Source of the DNA: Phallusia mammillata
Taxonomy: Eukaryota
Length of the DNA: 64,000 nt
Direction: 5' to 3'
NCBI GenBank assembly: GCA_965637545.1
Contig: OZ281496.1
Coordinates: 29,388,001 to 29,452,000, forward strand
Below are positions 13,982 to 40,475 of this stretch, piece by piece. How positions within the stretch are numbered: the stretch's first letter is position 1; every line of letters begins with the position of its first letter. The translations under genes and the position numbers were made by a program. Below the pieces are notes generated by a model that was given only the letters and a program-made list of their open reading frames with translations, was not told where the DNA came from and ran no database searches.

Positions 13982-16514
13982 ATGGTTCACATGCTACATG
14001 TTTACGACGAGGAACCCGGGAAACAGCCACTGAGCAACAATAGTAAGTCGAATAAGCAGCGTTTGGCAAAGTTCTTTGTTCTAGCTCGCGCGACTTGACA
14101 ATGGCTACGGCCCTTCTTACTGATGCTTATGTGTTTTAAACCGTAATACAGTGCAATGTGATGTCTGTAAGTGATTAAAAATATATTGTTTATGCAATTG
14201 CTATAGTGTATTAAAAAAAACACGCAGCTTGCATAGGAATATAGGATAGCAATGCACACATGTGAATATATAAATAGCTTTATAGGATATTAGATACTGT
14301 TTGTATCCAATTAACAATTGTATTTAACTGTTGTGTAGGTCAGATTGCGAACGAATATTCGTTTCCATCAGTGCAGTCAACCCCTGCAGAAGAGTATCTA
14401 CAATTGCAATCGTGCGACGCGAAAAGCAACATGCATGCTGACGACAACAAAACCTCCTACACACATGACGCGTTCAACTACGCAATGCAGACCGATTACT
14501 CGCCTGAACCTTGTACACCAATGGAGGCTGACAGCTCTGAATTTCCATCTGGCAATTTCTGCAACTTAAACACAAGAAGCAATACCACAGTAGAGCAAAT
14601 CTTGTTCAGTCCGCCTAAGGTTGAGCACCAATGCCCCACAGTAGAGCAAATTAATCCGATGGAAGTCTTGTTCGGTCCGCCAAAGGTTGCGCGCCAGTAC
14701 TCGATCTCATCGGTAATGGAAGTAATTGCAAATGATGCAATAAACGGTGCAAATACGAACACACCTCAACTGGTCAAAACGCCCAGTGCAATCACTCGAC
14801 CTATCAACATCAAAAAGAACGTTCAAATGGGCACATACGATGAACGCAGAGCAACACCTACCACATGTCGAGTGTCAAACACCCAGCCATCATCGGATTT
14901 GCCTTATGCTTGTTCACCAGCCCATTCAAACAGCCCGATGCCAATCCCCTTCACTGGATACAGAAACCTCCCAGATACGCCTCAATCTTCACAATTCGAA
15001 GTGCAGAGCAACGCATCAAATTCGTTCAACGAAAATAACAACGTTGGATCTTTCGGTAAGTAGTTTTTAGCAAAAAAAGACATCGCTAGTGTGTAAGTTT
15101 CGTTTTGACACATAAAACGCTCTCCATTGTCTTTTGGTGATTAGTTTTTAGCAAAAATGCTATTGCCGTACATAACACGCGTTCCTATGTCATAATGTTG
15201 CTTTAAGCACATTATTACGAAAATTACATAAATTAGCAATTGTAGCCCCGTAAATTTTTAAAGTGTATAACCGCGGCATTTAATTTGCGAAAAATAGTCG
15301 CAATCAAAAATAGCTACAAATTTTTTTTTGGCGTTCTGCACTTTTCCTGTGCTTCCAACTGTTTATAAATTAGGTCGCTTAAAAACTAACCTTTTTAGGT
15401 ATTAGTTTCGCAAAATGTCCGACGCAAACCGTTTTAACGAATTTTTACAATGTATTGCATCATCACGTGCGATCTGCATGGCGTCCGCCATTTTGAAAAA
15501 TCGCGACAATTTTTTCGGTAGTCTGGACGCTATCGACGAGACAAAAGCCTTCCATGCACGTGACAAAACGCAGTCGGCTTGCCAGGACCTGCCCGTAGCT
15601 CGCGTAGCTCGCGTAGCCGTCGTTTCGACGCGACAGGTGTTTGTGTGTAACATCGATGCAGCTTCCAAATCGTTATATTCCCAACAGTTAGACGAGCAGC
15701 GCGGTTTCTCGTATCGAGTGACAACCCTCGTCGTTTTTCGCGCGAAAATAACTTGTCTGGACACGCCCGCAGATTAAAGCGCCAGTGAGTCGATTAATTG
15801 CGCCACACTTGGTAGTTGTTAGCACCACACGCGACGTTGTTTGTAAATATTGCGAATCGGTTTTGTCAATACCGCAAATTAAACGTTTTATCTTTTCTTA
15901 ACTCCACAGGTTCAACGACCGATAATGCGAACCAGGCATTTCGTACAACTTGCCACGGGATCCAAGAAACCACGAACAGGCTGCAGACGAACACGGGCAA
16001 TTGGTGGGGCGCGTTGGGCAGCCAGTTTGGCTCCGCGCCAACCTTTGAAACCGCGTTGCCAGTTCACAACAAACTGACCAACGTCTCATCATGTCCTGAT
16101 TTCGACACAAACAACGAAGTTTTTGGCGACGGTTCTGATGTTTTCCAACAATCGCCGCAATATTCAGGCCGCGCCATGTCGGCGTCATCACCTCGGCCTT
16201 TCTCTGGCTCCGGATTCGATTTCCAGGCAACAGCTTCCGGTTTCGAACTTCAGGAAGTCACACCGGAAGCTGTCACCAACGATATCTCTGACGACATCTA
16301 CAGTCAAGTAGACAGAGCGGACCGACGTCGTATCCGCAACAATCTAGCGTGCAGGGCTTCCCGACATCGTCGCAAACTCCGAAAAATTAACAACGAACGG
16401 CTAGCAGCAGGACTGGAGACGCAAAACCAGGAGTTGAGGGAGAGAATCCGACAACTGGAATCGGAATGCCAAGTTACCAGGGATACGGTGCTGCGTCGGA
16501 TGAGCGAAACGTAG
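13982..16514 (+). CDS. Orphan bZIP transcription factor A (C/EBP superfamily, CHOP/Xrp1-like), ~460 aa
   Basis: Exons 13982-14042, 14339-15055, 15910-16514 joined in phases 1/1 (1383 nt). S/T/N/P-rich low-complexity N-terminus; C-terminal bZIP RRRIRNNLACRASRHRRK..LETQNQELRERIRQLESECQVTRDTVLRRM. The first coding exon and start codon are less certain than exons 2-3. Confidence 0.85.
15454..15768. promoter_or_regulatory. Intronic regulatory module in bZIP-A intron 2 (CARE, E-box, YY1, p53-family site)
   Basis: ATTGCATCA (C/EBP-ATF response element) at 15454-15462, adjacent CACGTG, CCGCCATTTT (YY1) near 15485, and TAACTTGTCT GGACACGCCC (two abutting p53-type decamers, one mismatch each) at 15749-15768. 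Motif matches only. Confidence 0.5.
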
Positions 16515-19500
16515 CTTGCACGGCGGACGGCCGATGTACATAAAGCAATTGACTTAAACTGAATCAAACACTGCTTTTTCCTAAACGCGAGGTCATCGGA
16601 CGATTTATTTATTTCGTGACCAACCGCTAATGGAACATTCCCTGATAGTTTCATATACTGTCCCTATTGTACAGAGGTTTCTATTTTTGTTGTTTCTATT
16701 TAATTTGAAAATTGTTCTATTGCATGTAAAGAAAACATGTTTCTTTCTTTTTTTCTTTTCTACATGTTTTGTTTCTATCCTGTGTGGGTATCAACCATTG
16801 TGAATGTAACGCGGGCCGATGACTTTCAATTCGCAAGTGATGCGAAGGCTGCTTTGAGTTTACTTATACCTTTGTTAAAGGCCTGTTGTTGTTTTTGTTA
16901 CGTTAGGAGCCTGCCGAACACTTCCAGATGATTTTGATGCATGTCCCGCGTGGTGCCATAAAACGGTTGAGTATGGGTCGTCTTGCCAAAGTGCTTGTTT
17001 TTTGTGTGTTAATGTGCCTTGTACACATGTGACAATGATACGGACTCTGTGAAGGCTGTGCCTGCGGTGATTTTTTTTGTAGAAGCGCGAATGTTTCTGT
17101 TAGACAAGTATTTGTCGATTATTGTTGCTTCAAAAAAGGCGTGTTTCAACTTTTTGCTGTAGCGAGTTCGTTAATGCTGGCATTTAAGCGCTCCATGGCG
17201 GCGTTTGGTTGTTCACCCTGTTGCTTTATGTGTGTGTGAGTTTGTCTTGAGAGTTTCCGTTTCTCTCGTTTTCCATCTTTTGTTTCTTCTTTTGAAAATA
17301 AAAACATGTGCAAAGTTCATATTGTTCTGCCGAGTTGCGTTGGTCGAGTCACGTTCGAAAAGGAATAAATCAACAAACTTACGCCAGGTGTCAGGCCCGC
17401 AATGGACAACCAACAAAGAGACATTTGTTCAGAACCGCAAGTCTTATTTACTCGACAGCTCTGTAGCATGAACTGATGCACCCACATTTGACACACATTA
17501 ACTAGTCCCATCAAATGGCGTTTGCGAACTGGGAAGACGGTTAATTAACTTCGTCCGTCGCACGCAACTATAACAAAGCCCGTCGAGGCTACGTCGAGCC
17601 TAAAGCGCGCGCTGTTGGCTTTCTACTTACAGCTGTACACCAGCAGTCTGGCACCAGGCCAGAAATAATCCACACGACTCGCTAACCTTTCAATTCAATG
17701 GTGAGTCATACGTTTGTTAACGCTTTCCATTCCGAATCCACTAATAGATGACTGGCTGACTGCTGCTGAGGCTTGAGGTTACTTACGGACAATGATAACT
17801 TTATTTTGGAAGTGTCCAGTCATTTGTCATCCCCGTTATTTTTAGGTTTGGCATTTCCTTTTGTTTAATACCAGCACAGTGATAGTATTTTGAAACCAGT
17901 ACGAAAATTACGTGAGGCAAGTTCTAAACATACAACATATTAAATTAAATTTGATGCACTATCTGCTAAACCTGTATCTACTTATTATTTGTTAGGTTAT
18001 AATCACAAAAGCTTTGTAAATCAGAGAAAAAATGAGTTATTATTTATTTTACATGTTATATTTTGTACAGTATTTTCGAAAGCCATGTGCAACCTACACT
18101 TTCATCTCCACGACAAATAACCCTTAAATGGCCATGAAACCCCTCGTTAAAAGATTGAACAAACAGGAGCTAGAATCTGTCTCGTTTGACCTGCAGTTGT
18201 TTCAACTTGTCAATACTAAAGCTTTGCGCAACAATAAAGTATTTACGTCACAGACAGTTTTGTAAAATAAAAAGGTTTTATGTATTGTAGGATAATTTCG
18301 TTTCTTTTGTAATGTTTCAAAAACTATATTGTTTGTCTTTTGATTCGTTGTAAAGAAAACTGTTAAAATATAGTGTCTGCATTTGTACATTTTAGCAGTG
18401 AAACCTATAAACGCTCAAATGAACATAGACACTAATTCAACAAATATTTTACGGCTTACAAATGGAATTGTGTTTCGAATTGAACAATAGCCGTAAAAGT
18501 TTTGAAACTGCAGGCTTCAAAACTTGGTGGGGGTGAGGTAACCTCTAAATGTCCCCGTTAATTGTCGTGTTACGTTTACGTAGGAGTAATTCAAACATTA
18601 CAGGCAAACAATTGTGTTTGGCAAGATACGTATGATATAGCGCATGTCAACCGCGTTTTTACTGTTTTTTTCAGAACTGTTAAACGCGTTTGCAAACTAT
18701 CATGTTGCATGTTATATTGTTTTGTATTCGTTACTTTTATGTGGAAATGAATTGTAACAAAATTGTGTTTTTAGGATGTTTTTTTCGCCTTGATGAGGCT
18801 CTTACTTTTTAAAATAGAAATGCAAATGGTGTTAATGTGGTATTAAAACGAACAATTACTAGAAAAGATTAAATTTCGTTACATTTTGGATACATATAAA
18901 AAACGCGACAATAACATAGTTAACTTGGACTTTAGGAAAAAAGTTTTAAATTTGATGATAATTATTCCATGGTGCAAAAACTAAAAAATATTGCACAAGA
19001 TTCTGGCAAAATGAGGTATCAACTCCTTGTGGCGCAAAAAAGCCTGTAAAGTAACAATTAGCGAGTCGCTAAAAGTTCGACAATTCGATTGTGACGCAAG
19101 TGTGTGACGTCATAGTGCCAGGATTGACGCAGATTCCATGGTTTAGCTGGGGGACTGCGCGTGAATGATATACGTAAGAACATGTAGGTTTGGTTGCGCA
19201 CAAGTATCATGTTAATAAGACTGTGTGCGCACTCTGGTCCCTGGCCTGACTCATTTCAAAGAAAAACTCGGTGGATTTGCGTAGGACAGGAGCAGACTGC
19301 GGCCAGCTAAAAACCAATTAACATTTTTATCGGTTGCTTTCGACAACTTCAGGAACTGAAAACTTGAAAACCGAAACTTGGTGAAATTTGCAATTAAATT
19401 TGCATTATATTTTTGAACGGCCATACAGAAGCGTTGCACACTTTATATTGTTTCACATACTCCATTTCCTTTTTAAGGGCTTGATCGTCATACGAGCGTG

Positions 19501-22500
19501 TGTGACAACAGCGCCATAAAATCGCATTTGATCTTATTAGTTGTCAAATACACACAAATCTGGTGCACACCAAATTCTTTAACCAACATTTTTTTGTATT
19601 TTCAATACGCCGCACATAAAATATATTTGTTGGTTGCTGAAGCTTAATAAAGATAAAGTCGCTATTCTAGTCCCTGATGGCTATAGAGTCTTGACGAGCT
19701 AACGAGTCAGTTCAGGAAGTACACGATCATGTACTCTATTAGACTAAGCACGTGACGTTGTATGACACCGATAAGACGCGGTGTGACATACGTGAGTTGT
19801 ATTATGATGCCTGTCATATGATTAGGCGTCAAACAAAACGTTGACCTTTTCAAAGTAAAGGTCAAATATTCCTCTAGTCAATGCCCGCTACACCTCCATT
19901 CAAAAAATATTTAACTAACGCGTAGGCTATATACGCCTTTTTTCCTTGTTCTTAAATATACAAATAAAGTTAGTTTTTTACATATTGAAGACCATGTTGT
20001 TACTGCCTTATTTTTTGTGAATAACAATATTAATAATAACATAACTTTTTGTCAAATAAATAAAGACAATAAAGCGAAGTAACAATATTTAACTTCTGAG
20101 AACGAAAAAAGTTTTGTACCGACATAGAACTTTATGTGTGAAATTGCGAAGGCCGTCGCCATCTTGGTTTCGGCAACACGAAATGACGTCATCCGGGTTC
20201 TCAGGATTCTCTAAATCAAGTCAAAGAATTAGTCACGTGATAACAACAGTGAAAATTTGATCATTGCCTGGCTGACATAATTGAAAATCCAAAGAGGAAC
20301 TTATAGGATGGAAAAAGCGCGTTGTGTTCCAACCGGTTCTGGCAAGTTCAAATTTGGTTCCTAACTGGCGGATAGAACAAAATCGCCAATGCTGCACGAA
20401 AAACGCTACACCGGCCTTGACAAATTAAGTCTCGTATACCTGGCAATGATCGATTAAACGGAGGTTTAACAGATAAACAGAGCGTTTCTCCTAAACCGAC
20501 ATAATGACCTTATAAGGAACCGAGCCACTTCGCACGCAAAGTGGTGTGGCTTTGTTGGTTTGGGTGGGCGGTATATTTTTCTCGTTACTTAACCTACCAC
20601 GAACGCCCAATCCAACACAGCAACACGGCCCTTGTTCACTCGCACGCGCCATTGTGGCTAGAGGGACTTTCCTCTTTTATATTTTTGTATGGGCGTGGGG
20701 ATATAGCCAGTGTGGGCGGTTTTATATGCTTGACTAACATAAGGTCATATGTTATACAGCACCCTATTCTATTATGTCATTTAATTTAATTATATACAGC
20801 AGTAATATGTTCCGATCTTTGGTTTCGTTGATAAAATTAATCAACAGTTTCCAAAGACTCATTATCCAATTAAAAATATGGTAAAGCGTAAAAAAATTGC
20901 TTTTCCCATGCACGTTTGCGTCTTACGTCAACCAGTTGTTAATCAATTCACTTTAATTAGAAGGTGTAATATAAAGCGAAAACACAGAAATCATATCTAT
21001 TTTTCACAAATAACTTTCGCTAACCAAACATTTATTCGGCCATAAACTGATAACACACAACGAAATGAGATACGTGTAAATGCGTGGTATCAAGGCAAAC
21101 AAAAATATTTAAATTTAGAAACAAACAATTCTCTATGCAGGCCTTAGTCAAATTCTCCTTGGTCTGATAATATTTGTTTGTTACCAAATATGGAAAACAA
21201 TTATATTCCACACTTTGCACAGTCGCTTTGGGCGTGCGAATAAATTCCCACGCATGGTTTTAATAATTATCCAATTGGCAGCGGTTTACCAGAGTTTCGA
21301 TGTGGGAAAATTTGCGGAATTGATTTTATGGGTGTGACAGGTTGGGCTATAGTTTCGGTGTTTGTCTTGAAAATATCTATTGACCTTGTTGGTTATTATT
21401 TAACTTTGTGATTGAAATAGTCTTTGTACGAATTGAGATGACTAAGCAGCCTGTGACATATGTCAATTTTATATAAAATTATCGTGTTTATCGTTTGTTT
21501 GTTTTTTGGCTAGTCACGTAAACCCGTAATTTGCAACTGTTTCATTTCAATCACTCTACGCTTCACCTATTAAATAATTAAGACAGCCTCTTAGGTATGC
21601 TTAGAAGACGGCTTGATTCGGTGTAACAATCCTCTAATAGTTTTAGGCCTGGCGTACTGAGTGATTTACCCATATATGAGTGTAGATGAATCATGATCGG
21701 CATGTACGCTTTAGGGCTAATCCCAGAGATGAACACATATTGACAGTTTCATTTAACAGTTTTTATTCAATTGTTCATTCACTTGAACGCGAAAACCGCT
21801 TACAGTGTTGCAAAACACGAAAATGTTCCCTTATATTATGTCGTGCAAACACGGCGAGTTTACATGGGACAAATACGACACGATACAGCGACAAGACTCG
21901 GGTAGTCTGTCGCTTAAACCTAAACCGGATCAGTAATAAATCCTCTTCACCCACACCCTATAAGCAGTCAACTGTCGCATCCCAATTGGCAAGATTGAGA
22001 TAAATCGCTGAGTAGGGTATCTCGAAAGCTGATACTATAATCGTCCGATTGTTTGTTTTCTTTTGTCCGACACAGTGGGTTAGATGTCAACGCTTTTACG
22101 ATGGCAGCAGATTTTGCAGCGTTAGCTATTTTTGCACAAGTAATTCATAAGACATGCGGGCGTCAACAAATACTTTCAACCGTGTTTTAGTGTGGCGTGA
22201 TTTATGATATGTCAGCATACTACAGTGCCACCAACTATGACTGATCCTTAACACGCTGCAATGGACAACTTGTGCTTCAAACGATCAGACTGGTGTAAGC
22301 TTAAAATTAAGCAAGTTTTTGCTGTCAACAATGGCATAATCGACATCCAAATAGTATTAATATATTAGCTATAGGTGAAGGAATTTGGAAGGCATTAACT
22401 TCATAAAAATACTGAAAAGTGCTACTATATATTTCTAAGTCCAACACAGAAATAGGATACGGGTGATTAATTTGACGTTAAACTCGCACAACTATGCGAA

Positions 22501-22817
22501 GTCACGCGCTTTTTGTGGCCCAACCACCGTCGAGTCGTCACCTGGTGCTTTCCCTACTGGTAACAGATATAGGTAAGCACCCGTTATAAGCCGTATGATG
22601 CTGGTCATGGCCGAATGCTTCACCACACCCGCCTATTTCAGTTCTAGCTCCACGATTGGGCAATAAGCAGACGTTCCACGGCAATCTGTGCGCATTGGTG
22701 CTTGCGACGTGGCCTTTTTCATTCTTCTGTGCTCCCCTTGGTGTTTTTTTGTAATATGTAAAGTTACGCGGGTTGTAAAATGACTTCATTTTTTTCGCCG
22801 TATGACAAGTGGACTTT

Positions 22818-22878
22818 GGAAGGTTCTAGAAAAACTGTTGGACCTTTTGATTCGACTGCGGGGCTTTTAGAACATTCC
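22818..22878. promoter_or_regulatory. Heat shock element cluster
   Basis: Perfect three-unit HSE gGAAg gTTCt aGAAa at 22818-22832, and a two-unit aGAAcaTTCc at 22869-22878. Confidence 0.45.
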
Positions 22879-24934
22879 CCTAGACGGGACGCCAACTTTA
22901 TTTGGGGATCGAAACGTTACCACCACATACAAAAGGGCATTTGCTTATGCCATGCCTGAAACTACAGTGTTGTCCAATCCAAAACTGAATTCTACCAACT
23001 GGGTTTGGCAAATATAATGTCATATGTTGCGAGTTCGGTGCATATTTATTTGGCCTCGACTAAAAATAATGGCACACTATTGTGGTAAACCACTCAAGCT
23101 TGAGATTTAGGGGTGGTCTAAATTTGGGTCATGTATTTTTAGGAAACCATATAAGCTTTAAGGGGAACTTTCAACTAATTTAGTGACCTTACCTTTGGTT
23201 TAGACTTGTGGACGTGATCGTTTTGTCCGCGTTTCATCAAATATTACCTGACAGGCGAGACTACAAAACAAATGTGTCAACGTGCATTCGAATGACACGG
23301 TTCTAGTTTCGAAGAGGTGTACACAATAGCTTGACGTCTGACAGGCAGCGTGGGACAACCGCGTTTCAAGTCGTGTCTTGCCTTATTGAGGCCAGGAGCA
23401 ATTATGAAAACAACCTACTAATTGATTCATTAAGTAGGAGTGGCGTATACTGCTGCTCGGCAACGGACCACAATTATACCTGATCGAGGACATCGATAAA
23501 AACATCGAGCGGTTGGAAAAGCTGCACAGACCCGCGGCCGAACAAAGGCGATTGTACGTGCGAAACGGCGGCGGGCTTAATTGAGTTGTGTACTTAACAA
23601 AACCGACCTTGTTTGCTTCAAGTTATCGAGGCCGTCCTCACGTGTAAGTTGCTATATCGCCTGACAGTCGCCCCCGCATTAAATGTACGTCACTCTTCTT
23701 TGTTCACGCCGCGCTTGTAATATAGTCTCGCGACATCTAAGCCCGATTCCTGTTTGTTGTGAGCTCTCGCGACGTTGCAATTAACATCGCTACTCCCTTC
23801 GTTGAGACGTCCTGTCAATCATAGACCGCAATCGTGTGTCCTCGGCCTTAGCGACGCGAGTTTTCATGTTGCGTTGACAGTCGCGGCATCGGGTTGTTAC
23901 AGGTGGCCCGCGGCGCGTTGAGCTACTTGCGGTTGCCCCTCCCCCAAGCTTCGCGCCACAGATAAAGCGGAAAGTTTTTGTAAAATTCGCGCGCTCTTCG
24001 AACCATTGCAGCTGAAAGCCTTGGGCTGTTTAGCTTGCAAACCGCGTAATTGGGCTTCGAGAGATTTTGATTCCTGCAAACGGCAATTCAAGATGCGATT
24101 GCGCACGACTTAAGTGTTTTGTGGAAAAACGAGCTGACTTCTTTTTGCTCTATCGTTGACAGCTTGCGCGTGGCTGACAAACGGTTCTTGTGTTTTGCTT
24201 GTTTTATTAACCCCTATGGCAAATTTCGGGGCATATACACAGAACAATTTGTGAAAGAGGATTATTACACCAGCTGGTATTGTGGGGGCCTATCAACCAC
24301 AAAATACTGCTTAAAATTTTATTAAAAAGCATGCCAGCGTATATGAAATGATTTTTATCGCGTTCAACAAAACGTTTGTTAGAGTCAAAACACGTTTTTG
24401 CTGTTGCGTTTTAAGCCGGCAATTCAAACTTTCTAAAGATGATTCAGACCATTTTGTCTACTGCTGCAATACGACCACTAATTGTTAGACGAAAACAAAA
24501 GAGATTTATATTTAAATTTCACGTGCCCTTTATGCTGTGCTAACACCGGGGTGCCCCTTTTGAGAACATGTCTAATTCGCATGCTAATTAGGTTCCTTAA
24601 ACTATAGGACCACCTTCAGCATATAAACTGCAATGAAAACACCGTTTCCGTTTACGTGACTGACAGGATTAGATAACGTCTGTAATACTCGTTTATCTTG
24701 GTATAATGTATAGACATCAAGCTTGAACAAAGGGATGTATTTTAGGATGGTGGCTTTTCAATTTGTAGGCGTGGCAAAGCCGTGATTGTCTTTTGGTGCA
24801 ATCAGGAGCATTTTGATTATAGTACAAGTGGAATTACGTTTAAACGAGTAATACTATATAGAAAAGTAGAATATAATTAGTGGCAAACGTACAAGTACAA
24901 GAAGTGCCTGATCTGACCCATTGTAGCATTATAT

Positions 24935-25065
24935 ACGGATCTGTTCATAAGTTTAATGATGAAAATAACGGCCCAAATAGACGTAAAAAGCGACAAACGT
25001 TTGAACAATAAAGCATGCCGCTTTTTACGTCTATTAGGCAGTTATTTTCATCATAAAAACTTATG
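24935..25065. repeat. Palindromic (foldback/MITE-like) element; partial second copy at 31427-31486
   Basis: 47-bp arms 24946-24992 and 25019-25065 are near-perfect inverted repeats around a 26-nt spacer. AATAAAGCATGCCGCTTTTTACGTCTATT recurs at 31427, followed by CTTATGAAAAGGTCCGT, the reverse complement of the left terminus. Confidence 0.75.
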
Positions 25066-27373
25066 GTCCATTGTTTTTTAGAGATTAACAATACCTTTAG
25101 GCTAATGTTGACGCACTAAAATACCCAATTTTCCACTTCCAAAAGGACAAACCCTATATTTGTAGTTAGTTGAATTTCCTATGCAAAACTTGACCAACCA
25201 ATCAATTAAAATGTAGATTGCGCTTCTTCACCGCAACGCTAAGTTTTAAGCAATTATCGTGGTGTGCGGCATTCCCTGGAAATTAGTTTTTGCAAATTCA
25301 GCTCTAATTACGCGTTATGTTCGCGTACGTGCTGAGTAAGATAACGTTCCTACTACGAGCCTGGAAAACATTTCACCACCAACAAAAAGTTTCTATTTTA
25401 AGAAAAATTCTGGGTTCGAAGGTTTATCTATGAGGGGAATACCCTCTTGTATAGATTGTTTGGGATTTTCCGCGCTTGGGTTTTAGGCGGGTTCGCTTAT
25501 TTTAAGCAGTAACTGCCGTTAAAATAGAGTATGTTGACTCAAATAAATTGAAAGATTCCAATAAATTTCTATGACTTAGGCTATCGCGTCTTTTTCTATT
25601 TTCGGCAACGCGGTATTGGTCACTGCTGTTTCAACTTGAGTTTTCAACCTATAACTGTATTTTGCAGGAACAAATACAAAATAATCACATGATATATATC
25701 TTTTAACTTGCAAAAATCATTGACATTAATTACTTTAAGTCACAAGACCGTAAACAGAAAGTTTTTTGAATTGCGTCCAGCTGATACAAAATTGCATGGC
25801 GTCTGCAAATGAAGTTGTTGCGCTGCAAAAAAAACACAACAAAATTTGCAAGGAGATATTAATTTGCATAACGCGCAAACAATCGAATTACACAAAACGC
25901 CACCAGCTGAGCGCACTGGACGTGTAATATCCGTTCACCAATCGTGAGAAATGAAAAACTAAATATATATATCCGGTCTATTCAAGACGGGGATGGCGAA
26001 ATACTTGCACATACGTTGCTCTTATCCGGATGAAGTCGCCCTTACCTCACACATCTATAGCGCAATTTCGTGTTGCAAAAGACGTATTTTTAGTATAGTC
26101 TGTTATACTTGATTGGAGGTGTGAAAAAAAATTAAACGGTCACCCGACGAATTATCACAGGACATGGGACCACCAGTTTGGACTGTATATTGTCATAAGA
26201 TGCACGCGCCCACCTATGACTGCGGGTAAACGCATGACAATTAATCACATGATTGATTGGCCAGATATTACAGGGGATATACCAAGGTTTTCTGGCCTTG
26301 CATTGGGTCGGGTAAATTCAGGCGGCTTTAATTTTGCAGGATGATGCAACTTGCCGTAAGATTTTTTTTAATCATGGGTTGTGATCAGCGTGCAACGTTC
26401 AGTGGTCGTATCGCAGGGTGAAGAAACGGTCATCGCTGCCAAATTTGGGACGGGTTTGTGCGTGTGTTGCCAAAAACTTTGACCAAGCATCTAGTTTATT
26501 AAACTGAACCAACGTTCCCCCAAACTCTGAGACACATGAGCTCCCTGATTGAGTACACCATATTCCAGAGTATAAGCGGGTCTGTACTGGAGACCGAACC
26601 TGAAAGTGCAATTGCACTTGCTTAAGCCCGAAATCCAAGCCAAACACGAATCAAAAAACAAACACCGTTTCAAGCAAAACATAGAATTTTTTTTAAAATA
26701 TGGTATTAGATTTTTTTTAAATGCATCAAATGTGAAGAGTTGAGCCCGAATTGAGCTTGGTTGATTGGAACTCAAACCCAAACAAAGTCAACCCCGAACC
26801 TTGTCCAACTTACAACTCTGCTGGAAGCAGCACGTTATTGGTCCAAGTAATTTGCAGTCTGTAATGTATTTTTACTGCACGATATATTTATATAGTGCTG
26901 TTTCTATTTTTGTACGCTTGTTAGAAACGGCATCCGTCTATTTTGGGCTCATCGTGGCATATTTATTTGAGTAATCATCCATTTAACAAACAAAGCCATA
27001 CTAACAGTAAGTATTTACCCAATACACGTTACAGATGCAACCAATTTTCTTGTAATCGGTGCACGCGTTTCTGCAAAAAGCGCACTCGCCATTGCAGCGA
27101 AGCGTTCCATTCATTCAGCAGCTAAGGTGACGTGGAGGTTTTGACGTGAGTCAGTTTTTCCAATGACATTTAAAGCAGCACTGATGCACCCGTGAAAAAC
27201 ATAACCCGCTGAACTCATTGACCCTATAATGCGCATAAACCTTCAGTTTCAAAGAAATACCTCGGTGTAAACGCCTACTTATTTATAAGAAACTTTAAAT
27301 TGGACTTTGGGCAGCCAGGGACGTTAGCGTACAACCTTATGTTTATACGTAGAAACAAGAATTAAGATCTATA

Positions 27374-27550
27374 CAATAAAACTCGGTTAATTCGAATCTT
27401 CTCCGAATTCGGACAAAACTTGAGGTAGGCCCTACAAATAATTTGTAATGTGGTAGTGCTTAAATTGGATATCGGTTAGTCCGGATCGTCGCCTAATCCG
27501 GACAATTTGTTCGGTCAAATCGTGTCAGGATTCGATGTTAACTTTATTTA
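27374..27550. mobile_element. Degenerate pogo/Tigger-like MITE (same family as 62486-62653, opposite orientation)
   Basis: Starts TA|CAATAAAACTCGGTTAATTCGAA; internal TCGCCTAAT and CAATTTGTTCGGTCAAA match the reverse complement of the 62.5-kb element; the right end is decayed. Confidence 0.55.
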
Positions 27551-30500
27551 TTTAAAAAAAATGAATTGAATTTGGCAGTCATTCTGGGGTAATTAGTTTA
27601 AACTGCATTAACACGTTAAGCAATTGACCAGAAAAGCAGCCAAGAACATAAAATGCATGCTTAAAATAAACCCACTCATTGCCATTGGACACGGTATCTC
27701 AGGCGACTAACACGTGAACGGGCGTGTGTATTAATAGAATCAAAATGAGCAATACACCACGCAACACTCACGCGCATTGAGAGTGATTGATTGCTTTCAA
27801 AACGGGACACAAGCGTTCTTAACGTTCTATTCCACCTTGAATGAAAAGCCTAGCAAGTCTCGTGATCGACCGTTTCCGGTTTAGCCAAGGCACTGACAAA
27901 ATTACCACAGCACAACAAGTTAGCTGCCTCGATATATTAATTCGACTAAGTCACGCGCGCTGCCCAAGTATGGAAAGCTTTTTTCAAGTGGCGCTCGTTC
28001 TGCGTCCTGCAGTAGCGATAAACAACCACCGGATGTTTTTGTGCAAAAACTGTCCAGTGTTCTGCCGCGTCATGCGTGTTGTGTACTGGCTCGACGATGC
28101 AAATTTGCATGACCGAGACATTTTTGGCGCTTCCAGGCTTGTCAAGCGGCTATGAGACGGGAAGCTAAATGGCATAGAACGGTCAGTCTTAAATCGCGTG
28201 CCCACTTCTATGACGCCAATTAATTATGACGCAATTCAAGCATAAAAATATTTTGTTGCATAGCTTATATCAATGACTAGACTTCAATAAAATTGGTAAT
28301 GAGGAAAATGCGATCAATTTGGTGGTACACAGTTCATTTATACAACAAAACGTGCTTCAATAACTTAATAACTGCTCGTAGCATTCGTCATAAGGCTTAC
28401 ATGAACTGAAAAACAAGCGTACTCCCTTTTGTGTGTGACGTCACAAAGAAAAAAACATGTAATTACGGCCTGGATTGACATGCTGACGTCATAATTTAAT
28501 TAGGAAACCGGACGATAACTTGAATTTAAACCAGTAATTAGTTATTTGTTGTGTGGATATGAGACAGTTAAGTTATAAAAAAACCCTTACGCATTCCAAA
28601 TATCGTTTCGTGTAACACACTTAAAAAAAAGTTTTCCAAAAAAAACCTTCTACAATCTACAAAATTAGCGGTGGTGGAAATTGAACAATCAAACATGAGT
28701 TATTCAAAAGATCGGTCACGGTTGAGCGAGTGCACCTGTTTGGTAACAATCAAGGAGCGTTGCTTTACTCAGCTGTCCAGACAGATTGCTAAAATTACAG
28801 GGCTTGGCACAAAGTGACGCAATACCTGGTGTTGTTCATCCATTTTGACAAGTCAGATGCACAACAGGTGTGTTGTTTTGGTTGATAATTAATCGCCTAA
28901 ACTGGTTGTTATAACATTGGGTTCGCCTAAACTAGTTTTAGCATGACATTCGCCAAAATGGTAGAAGCCGTTGCCTTAAGACATTCTTACTAAACAGTTC
29001 TCTGCTGGTAAGTAATAGTTGCAATGTTTTACACATTTTAATGTAAAATCTAGCGAAGTTGTCCAATCGTAATTGTCACTATGAAATATGTAAAGTTAAA
29101 TCATGTTGGTTGGTCATAATGTAGGCTATAAAACGAAACTCCAGAGCAAATAATATTATGCAGAGGCGTAACGTTTGCAGCCAATGACTTTTTGACCTGA
29201 GTAGTTGCCATGAAACCTTTACCTGTCCAATTCTCCTCTGAGTCAGTATGACTATAACATCGCGAACACTGTAATCTCACTAGCCTACCCTCTTATATGG
29301 CCGCGTTGTTTATACTTCCTCAAGAGCCTTTAGTAATTCGAAACTTCAACGATATACAAGTGCAAACAAGTACGCCATTGTCATGTAAACAAAGTGTTGG
29401 TTGTTTGACTTATCTGATTTAATAATTTTTATCGAAAGTGATTTGGAAATTTTTTTGTTGTCTCTTACTCTCAAAATGTTGGAAGCAAAGTTATTAAAAA
29501 CGACAAAGTAGGCCTTATTGCATATCGTTTGCACGTTGAAGAGATGATTTAAACCAAAAAGTATCAAATTTGTGATTACCGCCAATTTAGATAAATTTGT
29601 TTTTATTACCCTCTAAATGTTAAAAGCAAAAATGAAACCACAAAGTATGCTTTACTATACGTTATTTGTACGTTTAAAGATAGTTGGAAAGGCCTTTTCA
29701 TAACGCCAATTCATTGAACAACAAGTTCAAATTATTTCCATAGATACTGATATGGCTTTGCTTATTGGTCAAATTAAACAAAGCAGTTGTAAGGAAATTG
29801 TTTGTTTTTTCGGTTGGAAACCACTCAAAAACATTCCATTGGCCTTAATAATGGAAACCAATTGCCTAATTAAAACACCGTAGCCCGAAATATGCTCAAC
29901 ATTGTGCAACAGCGCCAGCTATCGGAGACTGTGTATATAAATTACGTCATTATTGTAAGATGGAAATCAATTAAGCCAAACCGGATTCGGTATGTAACTT
30001 ATTTTAGGAAAAGACGTTAAGCTCATTGGATTTCAAACAATCCTGGGGGTAAGTGCACCGGAATTAAAGCCCTCTTTTCTGTTAAACAAACGCGCTGAGC
30101 GGACGAGCACTGCCTTATTGGTGGGTGTAGGGCGTCCCTATTGTTAACAGCGATACACGTGGAGAATAAAGGGTCATCATAACAAGAGGGTTACGTATTG
30201 TGCTATTTTTAGATCGCTTCTATGGGATTACATAAAGGTAAATGTTACTGTGCAAAGCATTGCCGATTCCACACAACTATTTAAGCGGCAAATTTATGTT
30301 GACATAGACATTACGTAATGATAACGAAGGCGTTTGCTTTTATGTAAACCTACACCACAGTTTGGGATTCACAACAACGACAAACAAAAGGCGTTTCTGA
30401 CGCAAAACCTCATTCCAAATTCGGTGCGATACCAAACTCGCGCTATTTTGTTATTATCACAGTAAAATCTTTGAAAACGTCCGTCAAAAATCAATAAAGC

Positions 30501-32187
30501 GAGTTTGACGACCAATCGCAGGCATGTCCATATTTGGAGAGCCGTTTTGGCGGATTATTTTTTCGCATTTCGCGGGAAAACAGGTTACAATGTGATTACG
30601 ACACGGTCATATGTTGTTTCGTATTCGATTACGTCACCATTTCTTTCGCACGAGATCTCTGGGTGCTCTGGATTTGTAACAGCTACAATTAAGGCCGACG
30701 CCCAAGTATGCGGCAAAATTGGAAGGAACATTTTTATGGAAAACAAAACCACGAAACTTACAGTGGTTGAATGTAGCCTTAGCGAAACTATTACATTAGG
30801 ACTAGTATTTATGATTAATCAAATAAAGAAGCTGTGTTTATTTAAGAGTTTTAACACCAAAATGTCTTACTAAAATGAAGTGCTCATACACTATTCTTAA
30901 TACAGAATAACCGCCAAACTAAAATGCCTAATTATTATGCGATACATCCACCAGTTTTTTTCCCTATTACTGCCATATGATTTGGATCAAACCTAAATAA
31001 TTTGTGTTCAAATATTACTTGGACCAGTTTAAGTGATACTTAACAAACTCGCCTATGACGTAAAAATCGAACAATAAAAAACGTCGTGACCAGACAACAG
31101 ATGCGACAGTTTTTCTTGCCGTGCGAAGTAATTAAGCATTACGTAAGCCCCAACCTTGCGATTCTGACAACTTAGTGGCGCAATGATTTCGACGTTTCAC
31201 AAACTTGGTGGAGAGTTTTATGGGTGCAATAAAACTGTTGTCCCATATTGACAGTGTACACATTGCGTAAAATGTGGTATTGTTAACCCCTTTAAGGTTA
31301 AAATTTCATTATTTCGGCATATTTTACGAAAAGATCTTGCAACCCACGGCTTTACAAATGCCACTAAAGTATTTTGGGTTAGGTATAGAAGCATAAATTA
31401 AGTGCCAGTTGCTGAAACGCCTGAATAATAAAGCATGCCGCTTTTTACGTCTATTTAGGCCGTCCGTAACTTATGAAAAGGTCCGTGCATATCCAAAGTG
31501 CCCTCAGTTTGGGTTATTTAGTAATCTGTAGCATTTTGTTATATCTGTTGATAAGGATTACCTATTTGCAAAATAACACAGGTAAGGTACAAATATTTAC
31601 ACTTTATTTCAACTTTTTTTGCGATATGTTACGAGCTTCAAGGGGCATTGCAATACAAATTACAAAGGGCGGGGAAAAAGACACGAACGAAAACAAGGCT
31701 ATTTTTTGTAGCAGGATTTTCGTTTGATATTTTTCACAATTTTTTTTCAATTTTTTTGCAATGACACAGGGCTGTACACACAACGCAAAAACACTCGGAA
31801 CTTTTCAACTCTCAAACATTTCCTAAAAAGGACCAACGTCACTGAAACTATGGCAACAGAAGAATGCTGCCGATATAAAACAAGAGGGTAGAAAATTTAG
31901 GCCAGTAGAAAAAAGAATTTAACTAAACCAGTAAATTAAAACATTCAAAGAATCCAATAAATAATGACAATTTCAGCTATGCAAACCAACTTTCTATCTT
32001 ATGTTGTAAGACGTTAAAAATGCAAATAGTGAAAACTATTGCATTTCATACAATGGTCTGTAAAAGTAAAGACAGTTTGACTATATTCATATTAAAAGTC
32101 AAACATAATAATCAATCCATACAACAGAGGAACTTTATGAAAACATCACACATCTCCAAAAGGTCGGTCCACAAATTAATTGGACAG

Positions 32188-33783
32188 TCATTTTTTGCTT
32201 TTTCCAGTCATCTCAGTCAGGAGTGTAGCTCTCGTCTCCTTTACTTCTTGCTCCAGTTCAACAATTTTCTTGCGCAAGAGCTCGTTATCATCAGTCAGCT
32301 CCTGCATCTTCTCCGCTGCCTCATCGCGCTGCACTTTGCGCTTCTTTCGCGACTCCCGACAAGCTTCGTTGTTCTTACTCCTCTTCCTGATGTAGGAGCT
32401 TGTTCTTTTCATCTTCGGGGTTTCAATGCTCGCTGAAGTCGCTGGCTCTTCTTTAGTCAAATCTACGACGACATTTTGAGGCACTTCTGGTTGCATGTCA
32501 CCAATTTCAATGGTTGAAAGGTCACTTTGGTCGACCACAATTTCCACAGCCTGTAAAGATAACAAATTATTATTTAGGTATCAAAGCTATAACCCTAATG
32601 TAGTCAAACAATTGCTGCTGCTCTTACATGTGGTAGGACTGGAATCTGCTGAAGTACGGATTCCAAGGTGAGGCTGTCCTCTCTAACCATCTCTTGTTGG
32701 ACCACAGAAGTTGTGTAGACATCAGTGACAACCATATTCATTTGGCATTCGACATCACTCACTGTGGTCTGTGTGCAGACACTTTCATCTGATGTTGTGT
32801 TGACTTGGTTATTGTTGTTGTTGTCATTGGTTTCTGCAGTGTCTGTTAAAGATTAGTTTGTTAAATCTCGGAAGTGGGTTAAAAATAAGATATTTATAAA
32901 GCACAAATGGTTGCGTACCTGAACAGTGTGTGATGACTGGTGCATCCGTGAAGTATGGCTCCAAGTTGACGGGATAAGAGCTGTACAAAGTTGCATCCTC
33001 TGAAGCGGCTCTGAGCCGGTTGTTAAGCGGAGGAGAGGGAACAAATTCACCTCCCCAGGACACATTACGATGCCGTGCCAAAGAGCTACTGGGAAGCTCT
33101 GCATGTGTGAAGGAAGGAGAAGGATGAGCAATGTGTGCATCATCATCCAAGAAGGGAGTTGGGATGGGCGACTCTTCATGGTATTCTTCTTCATTGTCAT
33201 TTGGGATTGGACCCAAAACTTCAAGTACCATGCTCAATGATGACTGCCTTTCCATCTCGGGGATGGAGTGGTATGCACTCTTTTGCTTCAAGAGTTCTGG
33301 GAATTCTTGCATGGAATGTTTAGGGGTTGAAGGATTAGGTGAAGTCAAAGGATAGTCACAGCTATCAAGCTGGCTGTATGGGGATTGTGCCCACAAGCTG
33401 TTGGTGCTGGGCGCTGGAGAGCATTTGTTTTCAATGTCTCTGCAATAGTCAGTTTCAGCGTAACCAACATTGTCATTGGACACAAGAGCGTCAAGAGTTT
33501 CCATGTCATTTGTCCGGTTCCAGGTCATGTTATAGGCATCCGGGATTTCTGTAATGTTTAAAAGAGCCAACATTAAAACCATGTCTACTATAACCAGAGT
33601 CTTATGTTTGGAATGTTTTTTACCTGACAGGTCGCTACCCACAGAAATAGGTAGGTCTGGGAAGCACTCCCCCAAAGTCACCTCTGGCTGGGGGCTCCCG
33701 GGGCTCTGGGGCAATTGCCCCGCCCCTGGGTTTTCCTCTCTGAGCAATGTTTCTGTCTGCATGATGCAAGTCGAACTGAGCAT
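32188..33783 (-). CDS. Orphan bZIP transcription factor B (C/EBP superfamily, CHOP/Xrp1-like), ~455 aa
   Basis: Exons (minus) 33624-33783, 32919-33548, 32628-32842, 32188-32550, phases 1/1/0, 1368 nt. Acidic S/P-rich N-terminus; bZIP YIRKRSKNNEACRESRKKRK..MQELTDDNELLRKKIVELEQEVKETRATLLTEM. Start is ATG 33783 or the in-frame ATG 33762. Confidence 0.88.
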
Positions 33784-34049
33784 TGGATTGTGAAGCAACC
33801 ATTCTGAAATAGGCAAATATAAGTTTTAATACACATTCTGCAATGATATAATCTTACAATTAGACTAAGTCCCCAATTAGAAACAAAACGTTTGACGTAC
33901 CTCACAAAAGCAAGTTCTATACACACATTCATCCACAAATGCAATAAGTTATACTGTTTTTAATGCACAAGGACTCAGGTCCCAACAAGTTAATTCACAA
34001 AAGCAACAAAACATGTACCAGCGCTGCGAGGAACGCGATCGTTGATCAT
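33635..34049 (-). other. Spliced 5' leader of bZIP-B with uORFs (uORF1 11 aa; overlapping out-of-frame uORF2 66 aa; 3-aa mini-uORF)
   Basis: Exon 1 ends at 34019 (donor GTACAT), exon 2 is 33901-33953, exon 3 starts at 33803. uORF1 ATG 34049 = MINDRVPRSAV*. uORF2 ATG 33932 (second in-frame ATG at 33802) stops at 33635-33637, past the main ATG. Mini-uORF ATG TGT GTA TAG at 33917-33928. Confidence 0.65.
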
Positions 34050-34166
34050 GTTCTGTGCTTTGTTTTCTTTTTGCAACAATAACAAACTTTCACGCGGATT
34101 GCTCTCTGAAGGTCTGCTCGGCTTAGCGACTGTCAAGTTGTGGGGCTAGCGCGGCGCGAACGTTTA

Positions 34167-34311
34167 TATTTATAGCCTGGCTTCGAGAGGGTAAAAACGT
34201 TTCTCAAACGTTTCGGGGCACTTTTTTCGCGTCACTTCTCTCGTTTCTAAGCACGCCCGGACATGTCCGAGCACGTTTGGCAAGGAAAAAGCATCATGTG
34301 ATGTGACGTCA
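34167..34311 (-). promoter_or_regulatory. bZIP-B proximal promoter: TATA box, triple p53-family half-site array, CRE
   Basis: TATAAATA on the minus strand at 34167-34174; AAGCACGCCC GGACATGTCC GAGCACGTTT at 34249-34278 (three abutting RRRCWWGYYY-like decamers, the central one perfect); TGACGTCA at 34304-34311. Confidence 0.65.
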
Positions 34312-40441: not shown

Positions 40442-40475
40442 TTACGTCAGAGCTCTGGTGACGTCACTTGCGCAA
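40442..40475. promoter_or_regulatory. Core of the B3GAT/ABHD10 bidirectional promoter
   Basis: TTACGTCA (40442-40449), TGACGTCA (40459-40466) and the C/EBP palindrome TTGCGCAA (40468-40475), lying between the two divergent genes. Confidence 0.5.

What the first reader, a model, noticed from the sequence alone, without database searches (positions are those of the whole stretch)
13982..33783. Tail-to-tail pair of CHOP/DDIT3- or Xrp1-like bZIP genes with an intact basic region in an invertebrate chordate
Seen: two ~455-460-aa low-complexity proteins with C-terminal bZIPs, convergent across 15.7 kb. The heptad d positions are L-L-L-T followed by R and a terminal M: A = LETQNQELRERIRQLESECQVTRDTVLRRM; B = LTDDNELLRKKIVELEQEVKETRATLLTEM. 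Established (from recalled sequences): human CHOP reads [30 protein letters not shown], whereas C/EBP alpha, beta and gamma have Leu at the fourth d position. CHOP has a disrupted basic region; both genes here keep a canonical N-x7-R basic region. Drosophila Xrp1 is a p53-induced, uORF-regulated C/EBP-class factor proposed as a CHOP counterpart. Inference: this could be a pre-vertebrate DNA-binding CHOP/Xrp1-type subfamily, locally duplicated and forming a stress-integration locus.
Basis: partly seen in the sequence, partly recalled or inferred. Interest (0 to 1): 0.85.

Follow-up and report, generated by a model that had tools for sequence, protein, structure and literature searches.

The report
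Conserved tunicate pair of orphan bZIP genes
Two neighbouring, tail-to-tail genes of the sea squirt Phallusia mammillata encode DNA-binding bZIP transcription factors that sit just outside the ordinary C/EBP family. One of them has a dimerisation helix that looks more like the vertebrate stress factor CHOP than like any C/EBP, a testable lead but not proof of common descent.

Summary
Gene A (+ strand, 3 exons, 460 aa) is the deposited Phallusia mammillata 'Orphan bZip-2 transcription factor protein'. Gene B (- strand, 4 exons, 455 aa) is the deposited 'Transcription factor protein' A0A6F9DFC5. Both end in a Pfam bZIP_2 domain with an intact N-x7-R basic region. Their stop codons lie 15.7 kb apart.

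The same layout, F-box gene, then A, then B pointing back, occurs in Clavelina lepadiformis, so the pair is old. A and B also share an N-terminal motif, which fits an ancient duplication.

In trees both lie outside the canonical C/EBP clade (98/96) and outside PAR/NFIL3. They carry Cys where C/EBP has Val. Every named member of this Cys class is a tunicate. The nearest non-tunicate relatives are the 'PAR-L' bZIPs and beetle AT-hook bZIPs built like Xrp1.

CHOP likeness is real for B's zipper only: 29.6 bits against 16.9 for C/EBP. It rests on a CHOP 30-mer recalled from memory, because no tool returned a DDIT3 sequence. The AU test does not separate the placements. Stress function is untested.

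Verdict: known orphan genes, better classified; DDIT3 orthology is possible (about 0.3) but unproven. The scan's only other notes here lie on this same window (B's leader and promoter), not on other DNA.

The parts
13982..16514 (+). Gene A, 'Orphan bZip-2': exons 13982-14042, 14339-15055 and 15910-16514 (stop included); 460 aa
   Evidence: Hand-built GT-AG model. It is 457/460 identical to the deposited P0003, CAB3224146.1.
16323..16502 (+). Gene A bZIP: basic region RRRIRNNLACRASR (16323-16364) and zipper LETQNQEL...VLRRM (16413-16502)
   Evidence: Pfam bZIP_2, E 3.3e-09. Coordinates.
14677..14727 (+). Gene A N-terminal motif PPKVARQYSISSVMEVI, shared with B-type proteins
   Evidence: Alignment of nine ascidian A- and B-type proteins. 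Coordinates.
32188..33783 (-). Gene B (UniProt A0A6F9DFC5): exons 33783-33624, 33548-32919, 32842-32628 and 32550-32188 (stop included); 455 aa
   Evidence: The spliced translation equals P0001 exactly, with GT-AG introns of 75, 76 and 77 nt.
32209..32391 (-). Gene B bZIP: basic region IRKRSKNNEACRESR (32391-32347) and zipper LTDDNELL...LLTEM (32298-32209)
   Evidence: Pfam bZIP_2, E 5.5e-10. The AlphaFold model is one continuous helix over residues 16-81, mean pLDDT 90. Coordinates.
32434..32472 (-). B-type-only motif VVVDLTKEEPATS, 29 residues before the NN of the basic region
   Evidence: The VVDLT form occurs in 9 B-type or B-like sequences of the 150 scanned. Only two loose LT..P matches lacking VVD occur elsewhere.
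33211..33261 (-). Gene B N-terminal motif PEMERQSSLSMVLEVLG, shared with A-type proteins
16515..32187 (.). 15.7-kb interval between the two stop codons. No gene was recognised. It holds four perfect CRE palindromes.
   Evidence: No tblastx match to the Clavelina or Styela downstream flanks. No long repeats. CRE counts.
9851..11272 (-). F-box gene lying head-to-head upstream of gene A; part of the conserved layout
   Evidence: Pfam F-box and F-box-like. An F-box gene sits in the same position and on the same strand relative to the A-type gene in Clavelina and Styela.

Best explanation
The locus holds two ancient paralogous genes for sequence-specific bZIP transcription factors of a tunicate 'Cys class' within the C/EBP superfamily. 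Gene A is the orthologue of Ciona Q4H324, a gene of the group called 'orphan bZIP'. Gene B is the orthologue of Ciona Q4H322/Q4H323.

Shown:
- Each protein has a long disordered N-terminal part with one short conserved motif, Phi-x-R-Q-x-S-[LI]-x-x-[VA]-x-E-V.
- Each has a C-terminal bZIP with an intact basic region, N-N-x-A-C-R-x-S-R. This is the C/EBP-type contact set with Cys where C/EBP has Val.
- Each has a short zipper of three Leu heptads followed by a polar residue, and the protein ends a few residues later.
- The pair and its flanking F-box gene are conserved between two ascidian orders.
- The class lies outside canonical C/EBP and outside PAR/NFIL3.
- Its nearest non-tunicate relatives are the PAR-L bZIPs that Jindrich and Degnan list as lost in humans. 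That group includes the probable Drosophila Xrp1.

Inferred:
- The proteins bind C/EBP- or CRE-like palindromes as dimers.
- Thr at the fourth d position weakens self-pairing and favours heterodimers, with C/EBP, C/EBP gamma, ATF4 or each other.
- B's zipper core (a3 Val, d4 Thr, e4 Arg, Met at position 30, short tail) is the CHOP pattern. B may therefore share CHOP's partners while still contacting DNA with both basic regions.
For: - Gene models match deposited cDNA-derived proteins.
- Pfam bZIP_2 is found in both.
- Among solved structures, C/EBP beta and alpha score 44 bits, NFIL3 25 bits and ATF4 13.5 bits.
- The HMMER search of 1.84 billion representatives gave 767 hits. The top hits are Cys-class sequences, then beetle AT-hook bZIPs (76.5 bits) and PAR-L, with canonical C/EBP lower at about 47 bits.
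- Named Cys-class members come from Phallusia, Ciona, Clavelina and Styela only.
- Trees: A-type clade 87/95 to 97/60; B group 96/84; canonical C/EBP clade 98/96 without A or B; PAR/NFIL3 outside.
- Ciona also has a canonical C/EBP and a C/EBP gamma, and no Ser-type PAR-L.
- Clavelina has A-type (+) at 2948843-2952137 and B-type (-) at 2964419-2966069 of OX392447.1, with an F-box gene upstream of A.
- A and B share an N-terminal motif.
- CHOP zipper scores and diagnostic positions.
Against: - The backbone of the tree is unstable. The careful tree joins the Cys class with PAR-L (93/83), while the quick tree of all 150 rows joins it with canonical C/EBP (SH-aLRT 90).
- The Cys class as one clade has weak support (31/75), so A and B as sisters rests mainly on shared motifs and adjacency.
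- Family labels for the reference groups were assigned by basic-region motif, not by curated names.
- Many relatives come from unnamed metagenome contigs, so 'tunicate only' may reflect sampling.
- DNA binding, partner choice and any stress response are untested.
- Protein language-model neighbours of a B-type bZIP are generic bZIP and C/EBP beta clusters.
Confidence: 0.75

Rival explanations
1. B-type, possibly together with its paralogue A, is the tunicate orthologue of vertebrate DDIT3/CHOP. It would preserve the ancestral DNA-binding basic region that CHOP later lost. PAR-L, Xrp1, the tunicate Cys class and DDIT3 would then be one old stress-bZIP lineage.
For: - The recalled CHOP zipper scores 29.6 bits on the B-type zipper profile. 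It scores 16.9 on canonical C/EBP, 15.5 on A-type and 12.4 on PAR-L. No canonical C/EBP exceeds 17.5 bits on the B profile.
- CHOP has the B-type majority residue at a3, d4, e4 and position 30, plus the short tail. It matches the canonical C/EBP majority at none of these four positions.
- In two trees the CHOP zipper sits next to B-type. Holding CHOP with B-type costs no likelihood.
- The phyletic pattern is complementary. The Ciona bZIP list has A- and B-types and no sequence of DDIT3 type, although DDIT3 was also left out of that paper's human list.
- Blanco et al. 2020 (PMC6946401) report that DDIT3 may be the human bZIP closest to Xrp1.
- Memory-only lead: CHOP has LAWLTEEEPEP where B-types have VVDLT-EEP-TS. 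The PASLAWL part is confirmed in PMC5718554.
Against: - No DDIT3 sequence was retrieved by any tool, so only one recalled 30-mer was used.
- Placing CHOP with canonical C/EBP is not rejected (delta lnL 7.4, p-AU 0.35).
- By my manual count against the human strings, CHOP over the first 23 zipper residues matches human C/EBP gamma and beta (12 and 11 of 23) as well as it matches B-types (10 to 12 of 23).
- The diagnostic positions were chosen after seeing the match.
- B is 455 aa against about 170 for CHOP.
- DDIT3 is absent from the best 150 profile hits.
- A zipper can converge under selection for the same partner.
Confidence: 0.3
2. A and B are fast-evolving, tunicate-specific descendants of a C/EBP or PAR-L gene with no special relation to DDIT3. 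The CHOP-like residues in B's zipper are chance or convergence.
For: - All named Cys-class members are tunicates, a lineage known for fast sequence evolution.
- The fourth d position varies within A-type: Ala, Thr, Phe and Met.
- The tree backbone is unresolved.
- AU tests do not discriminate between placements.
- Language-model neighbours are C/EBP beta-like.
Against: - The B-type zipper pattern is conserved across the 17 B-type rows, whose named members span Phallusia, Ciona and Clavelina: Thr in 13 of 17, Val at a3 in 14 of 17.
- The gap of 12.7 bits between the B-type and C/EBP profiles for CHOP is large for 30 residues.
Confidence: 0.45
3. The two genes are ordinary members of PAR, NFIL3 or XBP1, or are the tunicate C/EBP alpha/beta-type genes.
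For: Pfam bZIP_2 is shared with these families. NN in the basic region is shared with PAR and C/EBP.
Against: - The PAR/NFIL3-type rows form the outgroup (88 to 93 support).
- The canonical C/EBP clade (98/96) excludes A and B.
- NFIL3 scores 25 bits against 44 for C/EBP.
- Ciona has separate canonical C/EBP, C/EBP gamma, PAR, NFIL3-like and XBP1 genes.
- Cys replaces the family-specific Val or Ala.
Confidence: 0.03

Closest known systems
Ciona intestinalis 'orphan bZIP' genes (Q4H324; Q4H322/Q4H323; ENSCINP00000002531 and ENSCINP00000002543), and Phallusia 'Orphan bZip-2'
   Same: Direct orthologues. Ciona P0039 falls in the A-type clade and P0020 in the B-type group. They have the same Cys-type basic region, the same short zipper and the same N-terminal motif.
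   Different: Nothing of substance. These genes were catalogued but left unclassified. Their family labels in Table S1 of PMC4736632 are visibly scrambled.
PAR-L subfamily of Jindrich and Degnan 2016 (PMC4736632), including Drosophila FBpp0083114 (probably Xrp1) and beetle AT-hook bZIPs
   Same: - NN basic region without the PAR N-terminal extension.
- Zipper ending near position 30, often with Met, and a tail of only 3 to 6 residues.
- Best non-tunicate profile hits.
- Grouped with the Cys class at 93/83 in the careful tree.
- Reported as lost in humans.
   Different: - PAR-L has Ser (Ala in amphioxus) where A and B have Cys.
- PAR-L has Met at d4 and Ala at a3, against Thr and Val in B.
- A and B have no AT-hook.
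- The grouping is not stable between trees.
- The Drosophila sequence is a very long branch.
- Its identity as Xrp1 is inferred by elimination only.
DDIT3 / CHOP (vertebrates)
   Same: - B's zipper core has the CHOP pattern: a3 Val, d4 Thr, e4 Arg and Met at position 30.
- The C-terminal tail is short.
- Zipper identity reaches 50% in some B-types.
- C/EBP-superfamily membership.
   Different: - CHOP's basic region is disrupted by Gly and Pro substitutions, whereas A and B keep N-x7-R.
- CHOP is about 170 aa against 455 to 460.
- A's zipper is not CHOP-like.
- Orthology is untested with real DDIT3 sequences.
Canonical C/EBP (alpha, beta, delta, epsilon) and C/EBP gamma
   Same: - Closest solved structures, 44 bits.
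- Same DNA-contact residues except one.
- Asn at the first a position.
- A conserved g3 Glu to e4 Arg pair (read from the sequences).
   Different: - Val is replaced by Cys in the basic region.
- Leu is replaced by Thr at d4.
- There is no fifth Leu heptad.
- The tail is much shorter.
- A and B lie outside the 98/96 C/EBP clade.
- Tunicates keep separate C/EBP and C/EBP gamma genes.

Membership tests
bZIP superfamily (Pfam bZIP_2, PF07716) | Basic region with N-x7-R followed in register by a heptad Leu zipper on one continuous helix | tested here: met
   bZIP_2 at 37.1 and 39.6 bits against a cut-off of 22.3. NNLACRASR and NNEACRESR are present. The AlphaFold model of B is a single helix, residues 16-81.
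Canonical C/EBP | Basic-region signature RNNIAVRKSR, with Val at the specificity position | tested here: not met
   A and B have Cys there, as do 53 relatives. All 20 canonical C/EBP rows have Val.
Canonical C/EBP | Groups inside the C/EBP clade; Leu at the fourth d position; a longer zipper and tail | tested here: not met
   The C/EBP clade at 98/96 excludes A and B. At d4, C/EBP has Leu in 19 of 20 rows, against Thr in A and B. Median tail is 21.5 residues against 3 to 6.
DDIT3 / CHOP | Basic region disrupted at conserved DNA-contact positions by Gly and Pro substitutions | tested here: not met
   Both proteins keep the full N-N-x-A-x-R-x-S-R contact set. CHOP's unique substitutions are described in PMC5718554.
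DDIT3 / CHOP | CHOP-type zipper core and short C-terminal tail | tested here: inconclusive
   Met for B: 29.6 bits on the B profile, and four of four diagnostic positions shared. Not met for A: 15.5 bits. The CHOP string was recalled, not supplied by a tool.
DDIT3 / CHOP | Orthology shown by phylogeny with vertebrate DDIT3 sequences | tested here: inconclusive
   Only a 30-residue recalled zipper was available. It sits beside B-type without support. AU p is 0.52 for CHOP with B-type and 0.35 for CHOP with C/EBP.
DDIT3 / CHOP | Induction by ER stress, amino-acid starvation or DNA damage; translational control by a uORF | not testable with these tools
   Only sequence motifs are available: uATGs in B's presumed leader, a TATA box, a CRE and one perfect p53 half-site.
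PAR-L (Jindrich and Degnan 2016) / Xrp1 | Two Asn at basic-region positions 13-14, no PAR-specific N-terminal extension, and grouping with PAR-L sequences | tested here: inconclusive
   NN is present and there is no PAR extension. PAR-L gives the best non-tunicate hits. The careful tree groups them at 93/83. The quick tree does not.
PAR-L (Jindrich and Degnan 2016) / Xrp1 | AT-hook N-terminal to the bZIP, the Xrp1 architecture described in PMC6946401 | tested here: not met
   There is no GRP core in P0001 or P0003. It is present in the beetle relatives P0091 and P0015.
PAR / NFIL3 | KNNxAAKRSR basic region with its extended N-terminal box, and grouping with PAR/NFIL3 | tested here: not met
   The Ala-type rows form the outgroup at 88 to 93 support. 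NFIL3 structures score 25 bits against 44 for C/EBP.

The most novel reading that the evidence does not exclude
The B-type gene, with A as its old paralogue, is the tunicate orthologue of vertebrate DDIT3/CHOP and still has a working DNA-binding basic region. CHOP would then not be a vertebrate invention derived from C/EBP. It would be the degenerate survivor of the PAR-L/Xrp1 lineage that is listed as lost in humans. That would link fly Xrp1, the tunicate orphan bZIPs and CHOP in one ancient stress-factor family.
Probability: 0.3. Interest if true: 0.7.

Novelty: new member of a known kind. Interest (0 to 1): 0.45.

Why it matters
CHOP/DDIT3 is a central effector of the integrated stress response, yet no invertebrate orthologue is recognised. 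Fly Xrp1 plays a similar role and has no recognised relative outside Diptera (PMC6946401).

Tunicates are the sister group of vertebrates. A tunicate bZIP with a CHOP-type zipper and an intact basic region would show what CHOP looked like before it lost direct DNA binding. It would also make the proposed Xrp1-CHOP link testable in Ciona or Phallusia embryos.

Even without that link, the work gives the long-standing 'orphan bZIP' genes a place. They form a conserved, convergent gene pair of a tunicate Cys class next to PAR-L and C/EBP.

Tried and rejected
1. Fetching DDIT3 with the search for homologous proteins. An alignment built to carry words shared with DDIT3 (A3) gave 12 candidates and no hit. 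Searches with B's N-terminal ORF and with B's bZIP region found only Phallusia, one unnamed fragment and Clavelina.
2. PDB holds no DDIT3 chain among the matches.
3. Foldseek against Swiss-Prot models returned one weak C/EBP beta match.
4. Two ESM Atlas searches gave generic bZIP and C/EBP beta clusters.
5. Full-text searches for CHOP peptide strings found nothing.
6. Reinke et al. 2013, which measured Ciona bZIP interactions, is not held.
7. Searches for literature on the 'orphan bZIP' genes found nothing useful.
8. Ciona genomic context could not be fetched. Adjacency in Ciona therefore rests only on close Ensembl identifiers.
9. No partner gene lies within 10 kb in two unnamed contigs or in Styela.
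Two 59-residue Drosophila strings from the paper's table were the only added rows.
11. PAR/NFIL3 membership was considered and rejected.
Full report
**What is there**

The window is Phallusia mammillata DNA. The 330-aa ORF on the minus strand found a deposited P. mammillata protein (P0001, A0A6F9DFC5, 455 aa). That protein maps back exon by exon at 100%. After refinement to GT-AG junctions, gene B has these exons: 33783-33624, 33548-32919, 32842-32628 and 32550-32188. The spliced translation equals P0001 exactly.

I built gene A by hand from frames and splice sites: 13982-14042, 14339-15055 and 15910-16514, giving 460 aa. The HMMER search of representatives then returned P0003, a 460-aa protein named 'Orphan bZip-2 transcription factor protein [Phallusia mammillata]'. 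It differs from my model at three residues.

Both C-termini are Pfam bZIP_2. The stop codons are 15,673 bp apart and the genes converge.

**Conservation of the pair**

In Clavelina lepadiformis (OX392447.1) the A-type gene lies at 2948843-2952137 on the plus strand. The B-type gene lies at 2964419-2966069 on the minus strand, about 12 kb downstream. An F-box gene sits upstream of A on the opposite strand. The window has the same order and orientation, with its F-box gene at 9851-11272.

Styela clava keeps the F-box gene and an A-like gene, but has no B within 9 kb. Ciona has both types (P0039 = Q4H324; P0020 = Q4H322/Q4H323). Its genomic context could not be fetched.

BLASTP aligns A and B significantly only in the bZIP (39% identity, E 1e-10). 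A multi-species alignment, however, shows a shared N-terminal motif: PEMERQSSLSMVLEVLG in B and PPKVARQYSISSVMEVI in A. It is present in Phallusia, Clavelina, Ciona and Styela. The two genes are therefore old paralogues, duplicated before these ascidian orders split. This is not a recent local duplication.

**Family placement**

A profile of the two bZIPs found 767 proteins with E below 0.001 among 1.84 billion representatives. The hits rank as follows:
- First, proteins with the same Cys-containing basic region (NNxACRxSR).
- Then beetle proteins with an AT-hook directly before the bZIP (76.5 bits).
- Then a large Ser-type group.
- Then canonical C/EBPs with NNIAVRKSR, at about 47 bits.

Every Cys-class protein that carries a name is from a tunicate: Phallusia, Ciona, Clavelina or Styela.

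The Ser-type group matches the 'PAR-L' subfamily of Jindrich and Degnan 2016 (PMC4736632). They trace PAR-L to the last common metazoan ancestor and list it as lost in humans. Its Drosophila member FBpp0083114 is probably Xrp1. I infer this by elimination, because Baillon et al. 2018 recognise three fly C/EBP homologues and slbo and Irbp18 are otherwise accounted for.

Among solved structures, C/EBP beta and alpha score 44 bits, NFIL3 25 bits and ATF4 13.5 bits.

**Trees**

I used 65 columns in fixed register. The quick tree of 150 rows and the careful trees of 91 and 93 rows agree on four points:
- An A-type clade (87/95 to 97/60).
- A B-type group (96/84).
- A canonical C/EBP clade (98/96) that excludes A and B.
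- PAR/NFIL3-type rows as the outgroup.

The trees disagree on the backbone. The careful tree joins the Cys class with PAR-L and the AT-hook proteins (93/83), as sister to C/EBP. The quick tree joins the Cys class with C/EBP (SH-aLRT 90). The Cys class as a single clade is weakly supported (31/75).

The full Ciona bZIP list in Table S1 has a separate canonical C/EBP, a C/EBP gamma, PAR, NFIL3-like, XBP1 and ATF4 genes, and no Ser-type PAR-L. This fits the idea that A and B occupy the PAR-L slot in tunicates.

**The CHOP question**

No tool returned a DDIT3 sequence, as set out under what I tried. I therefore used only the 30-residue CHOP zipper quoted in the finding. I recall the same string, but it is unverified.

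Evidence in favour of CHOP likeness:
- Ungapped BLOSUM62 scores against it are highest for B-types: 57 to 71, with 12 to 15 identities. Canonical C/EBPs in the set reach at most 53.
- Zipper-only profiles give CHOP 29.6 bits for B-type and 25.2 for other Cys-class sequences. They give 16.9 for canonical C/EBP, 15.5 for A-type, 13.7 for PAR/NFIL3 and 12.4 for PAR-L.
- No canonical C/EBP exceeds 17.5 bits on the B profile.
- At a3, d4, e4 and position 30, CHOP has Val, Thr, Arg and Met. That is the majority state in B-types (14, 13, 12 and 11 of 17). Canonical C/EBPs have Leu, Leu, Lys and Gly or Pro.
- B-types and CHOP end within about 6 residues, against a median of 21.5 for C/EBP.
- In both careful trees the CHOP row sits beside B-type.

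Evidence against:
- Forcing CHOP with canonical C/EBP costs only 7.4 log-likelihood units (p-AU 0.35), while CHOP with B-type gives p 0.52.
- By my manual count against the human strings, CHOP over the first 23 residues matches human C/EBP gamma and beta as well as it matches B-types.
- The diagnostic positions were picked after the match had been seen.

A's zipper is not CHOP-like. The accurate statement is that B has a CHOP-type zipper core on a DNA-binding-competent bZIP. Orthology is open.

One further lead comes from memory only. B-types have a private motif, VVDLT-x-EEP-x-TS, 18 to 36 residues before the basic region. CHOP has LAWLTEEEPEP in a similar place. Only the PASLAWL part is confirmed by a paper (PMC5718554).

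**How it most likely works**

Shown: two expressed, conserved bZIP genes with all C/EBP-type DNA-contact residues except Val to Cys, and a short zipper.

Inferred from established bZIP rules:
- They bind C/EBP or CRE-type palindromes as dimers.
- Asn at the first a position, and the g-to-e' pairs read from the sequences, allow pairing with themselves, with each other and with C/EBP-class partners. In A these pairs are R-E and E-R. In B they are D-R, K-E and E-R.
- The polar d4 residue and the missing fifth heptad should weaken homodimers.
- The conserved Cys on the DNA-contact face might make binding redox-sensitive, as in Fos and Jun. This is speculation.
- The shared N-terminal motif fits the Phi-x-R-x-x-S-x-x-x-Phi consensus of AMPK and CaMK-type kinases. 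This too is speculation.

The 'stress-integration locus' idea has only motif-level support. B has a TATA box at 34174-34167, a perfect CRE at 34304-34311 and one perfect p53 half-site at 34259-34268. It also has several upstream ATGs, but a likely 5'UTR intron makes the uORF layout uncertain.

**Verdict**

These are real genes, already catalogued as orphan bZIPs, and now placed as a conserved convergent pair of a tunicate Cys class next to PAR-L/Xrp1 and C/EBP. The DDIT3 orthology reading keeps a probability of about 0.3 and is directly testable.

Noticed in passing
window 12472, 19105, 20184, 28436, 28484, 34304, 36032, 40459, 44481, 44523, 45956, 61518: The perfect CRE palindrome TGACGTCA occurs 12 times against 0.71 expected, and none of 100 shuffles reaches 12. 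The flanks differ, so these are not copies of one repeat. Four lie in the A-B interval, one between the F-box gene and gene A, and one about 130 bp upstream of gene B's TATA box.
   Followed up: partly
window 40440-40485: A cluster of bZIP sites within about 40 bp: TTACGTCA, TGACGTCA and the perfect C/EBP palindrome TTGCGCAA. It lies upstream of the GT43 (B3GAT-like) gene at 38739-39737 (- strand). Near 36010 a CARE-like TGATGCAAC sits next to another CRE.
   Followed up: no
window 33784-34320 (- strand): Gene B's upstream region has TATAAATA (34174-34167), a perfect p53 half-site GGACATGTCC (34259-34268) and upstream ATGs at 34049, 34014 and 33932. The last opens a long out-of-frame ORF across the main ATG. 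A likely 5'UTR intron (a GTACGT donor, then CATTGCAG and TTTCAG acceptors closer to the ATG) could remove some of them. This bears on earlier notes s1-361533 and s1-361557.
   Followed up: partly
window 14677-14727 and 33211-33261: The N-terminal motif shared by A and B fits the kinase consensus Phi-x-R-x-x-S-x-x-x-Phi of the AMPK/CaMK/MARK type: V-A-R-Q-Y-S-I-S-S-V in A and M-E-R-Q-S-S-L-S-M-V in B. It is conserved in four ascidian genera.
   Followed up: partly
window 3020-5280 (-), 6363-7352 (+), 9851-11272 (-), 38739-39737 (-), 42480-42932 (+): Neighbouring genes: a PSTAIRE-type CDK in pieces, a family-2 sulfotransferase, an F-box protein with an Arf-like C-terminus, a GT43 glucuronyltransferase and an alpha/beta hydrolase. 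From memory, human CDK2 and DDIT3 both lie on 12q13. I did not test this as synteny.
   Followed up: no
P0015 (Abscondita terminalis KAF5292755.1): This firefly protein carries three repeats of the AT-hook plus bZIP module, with ARRGRPPKRP at residues 460, 613 and 762. It is either a tandem gene array merged by the annotation or a true triple-bZIP protein.
   Followed up: no
PMC4736632 Table S1, Ciona rows: The family labels of the Ciona intestinalis rows are shifted against the sequences. For example, a MAF sequence is labelled BACH, an ATF4 sequence NFE2, the B-type SMAF and the A-type LMAF. The label list holds three CEBP entries and one NOVEL entry, but there is only one canonical C/EBP sequence. 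A and B were therefore probably filed as CEBP or NOVEL.
   Followed up: partly
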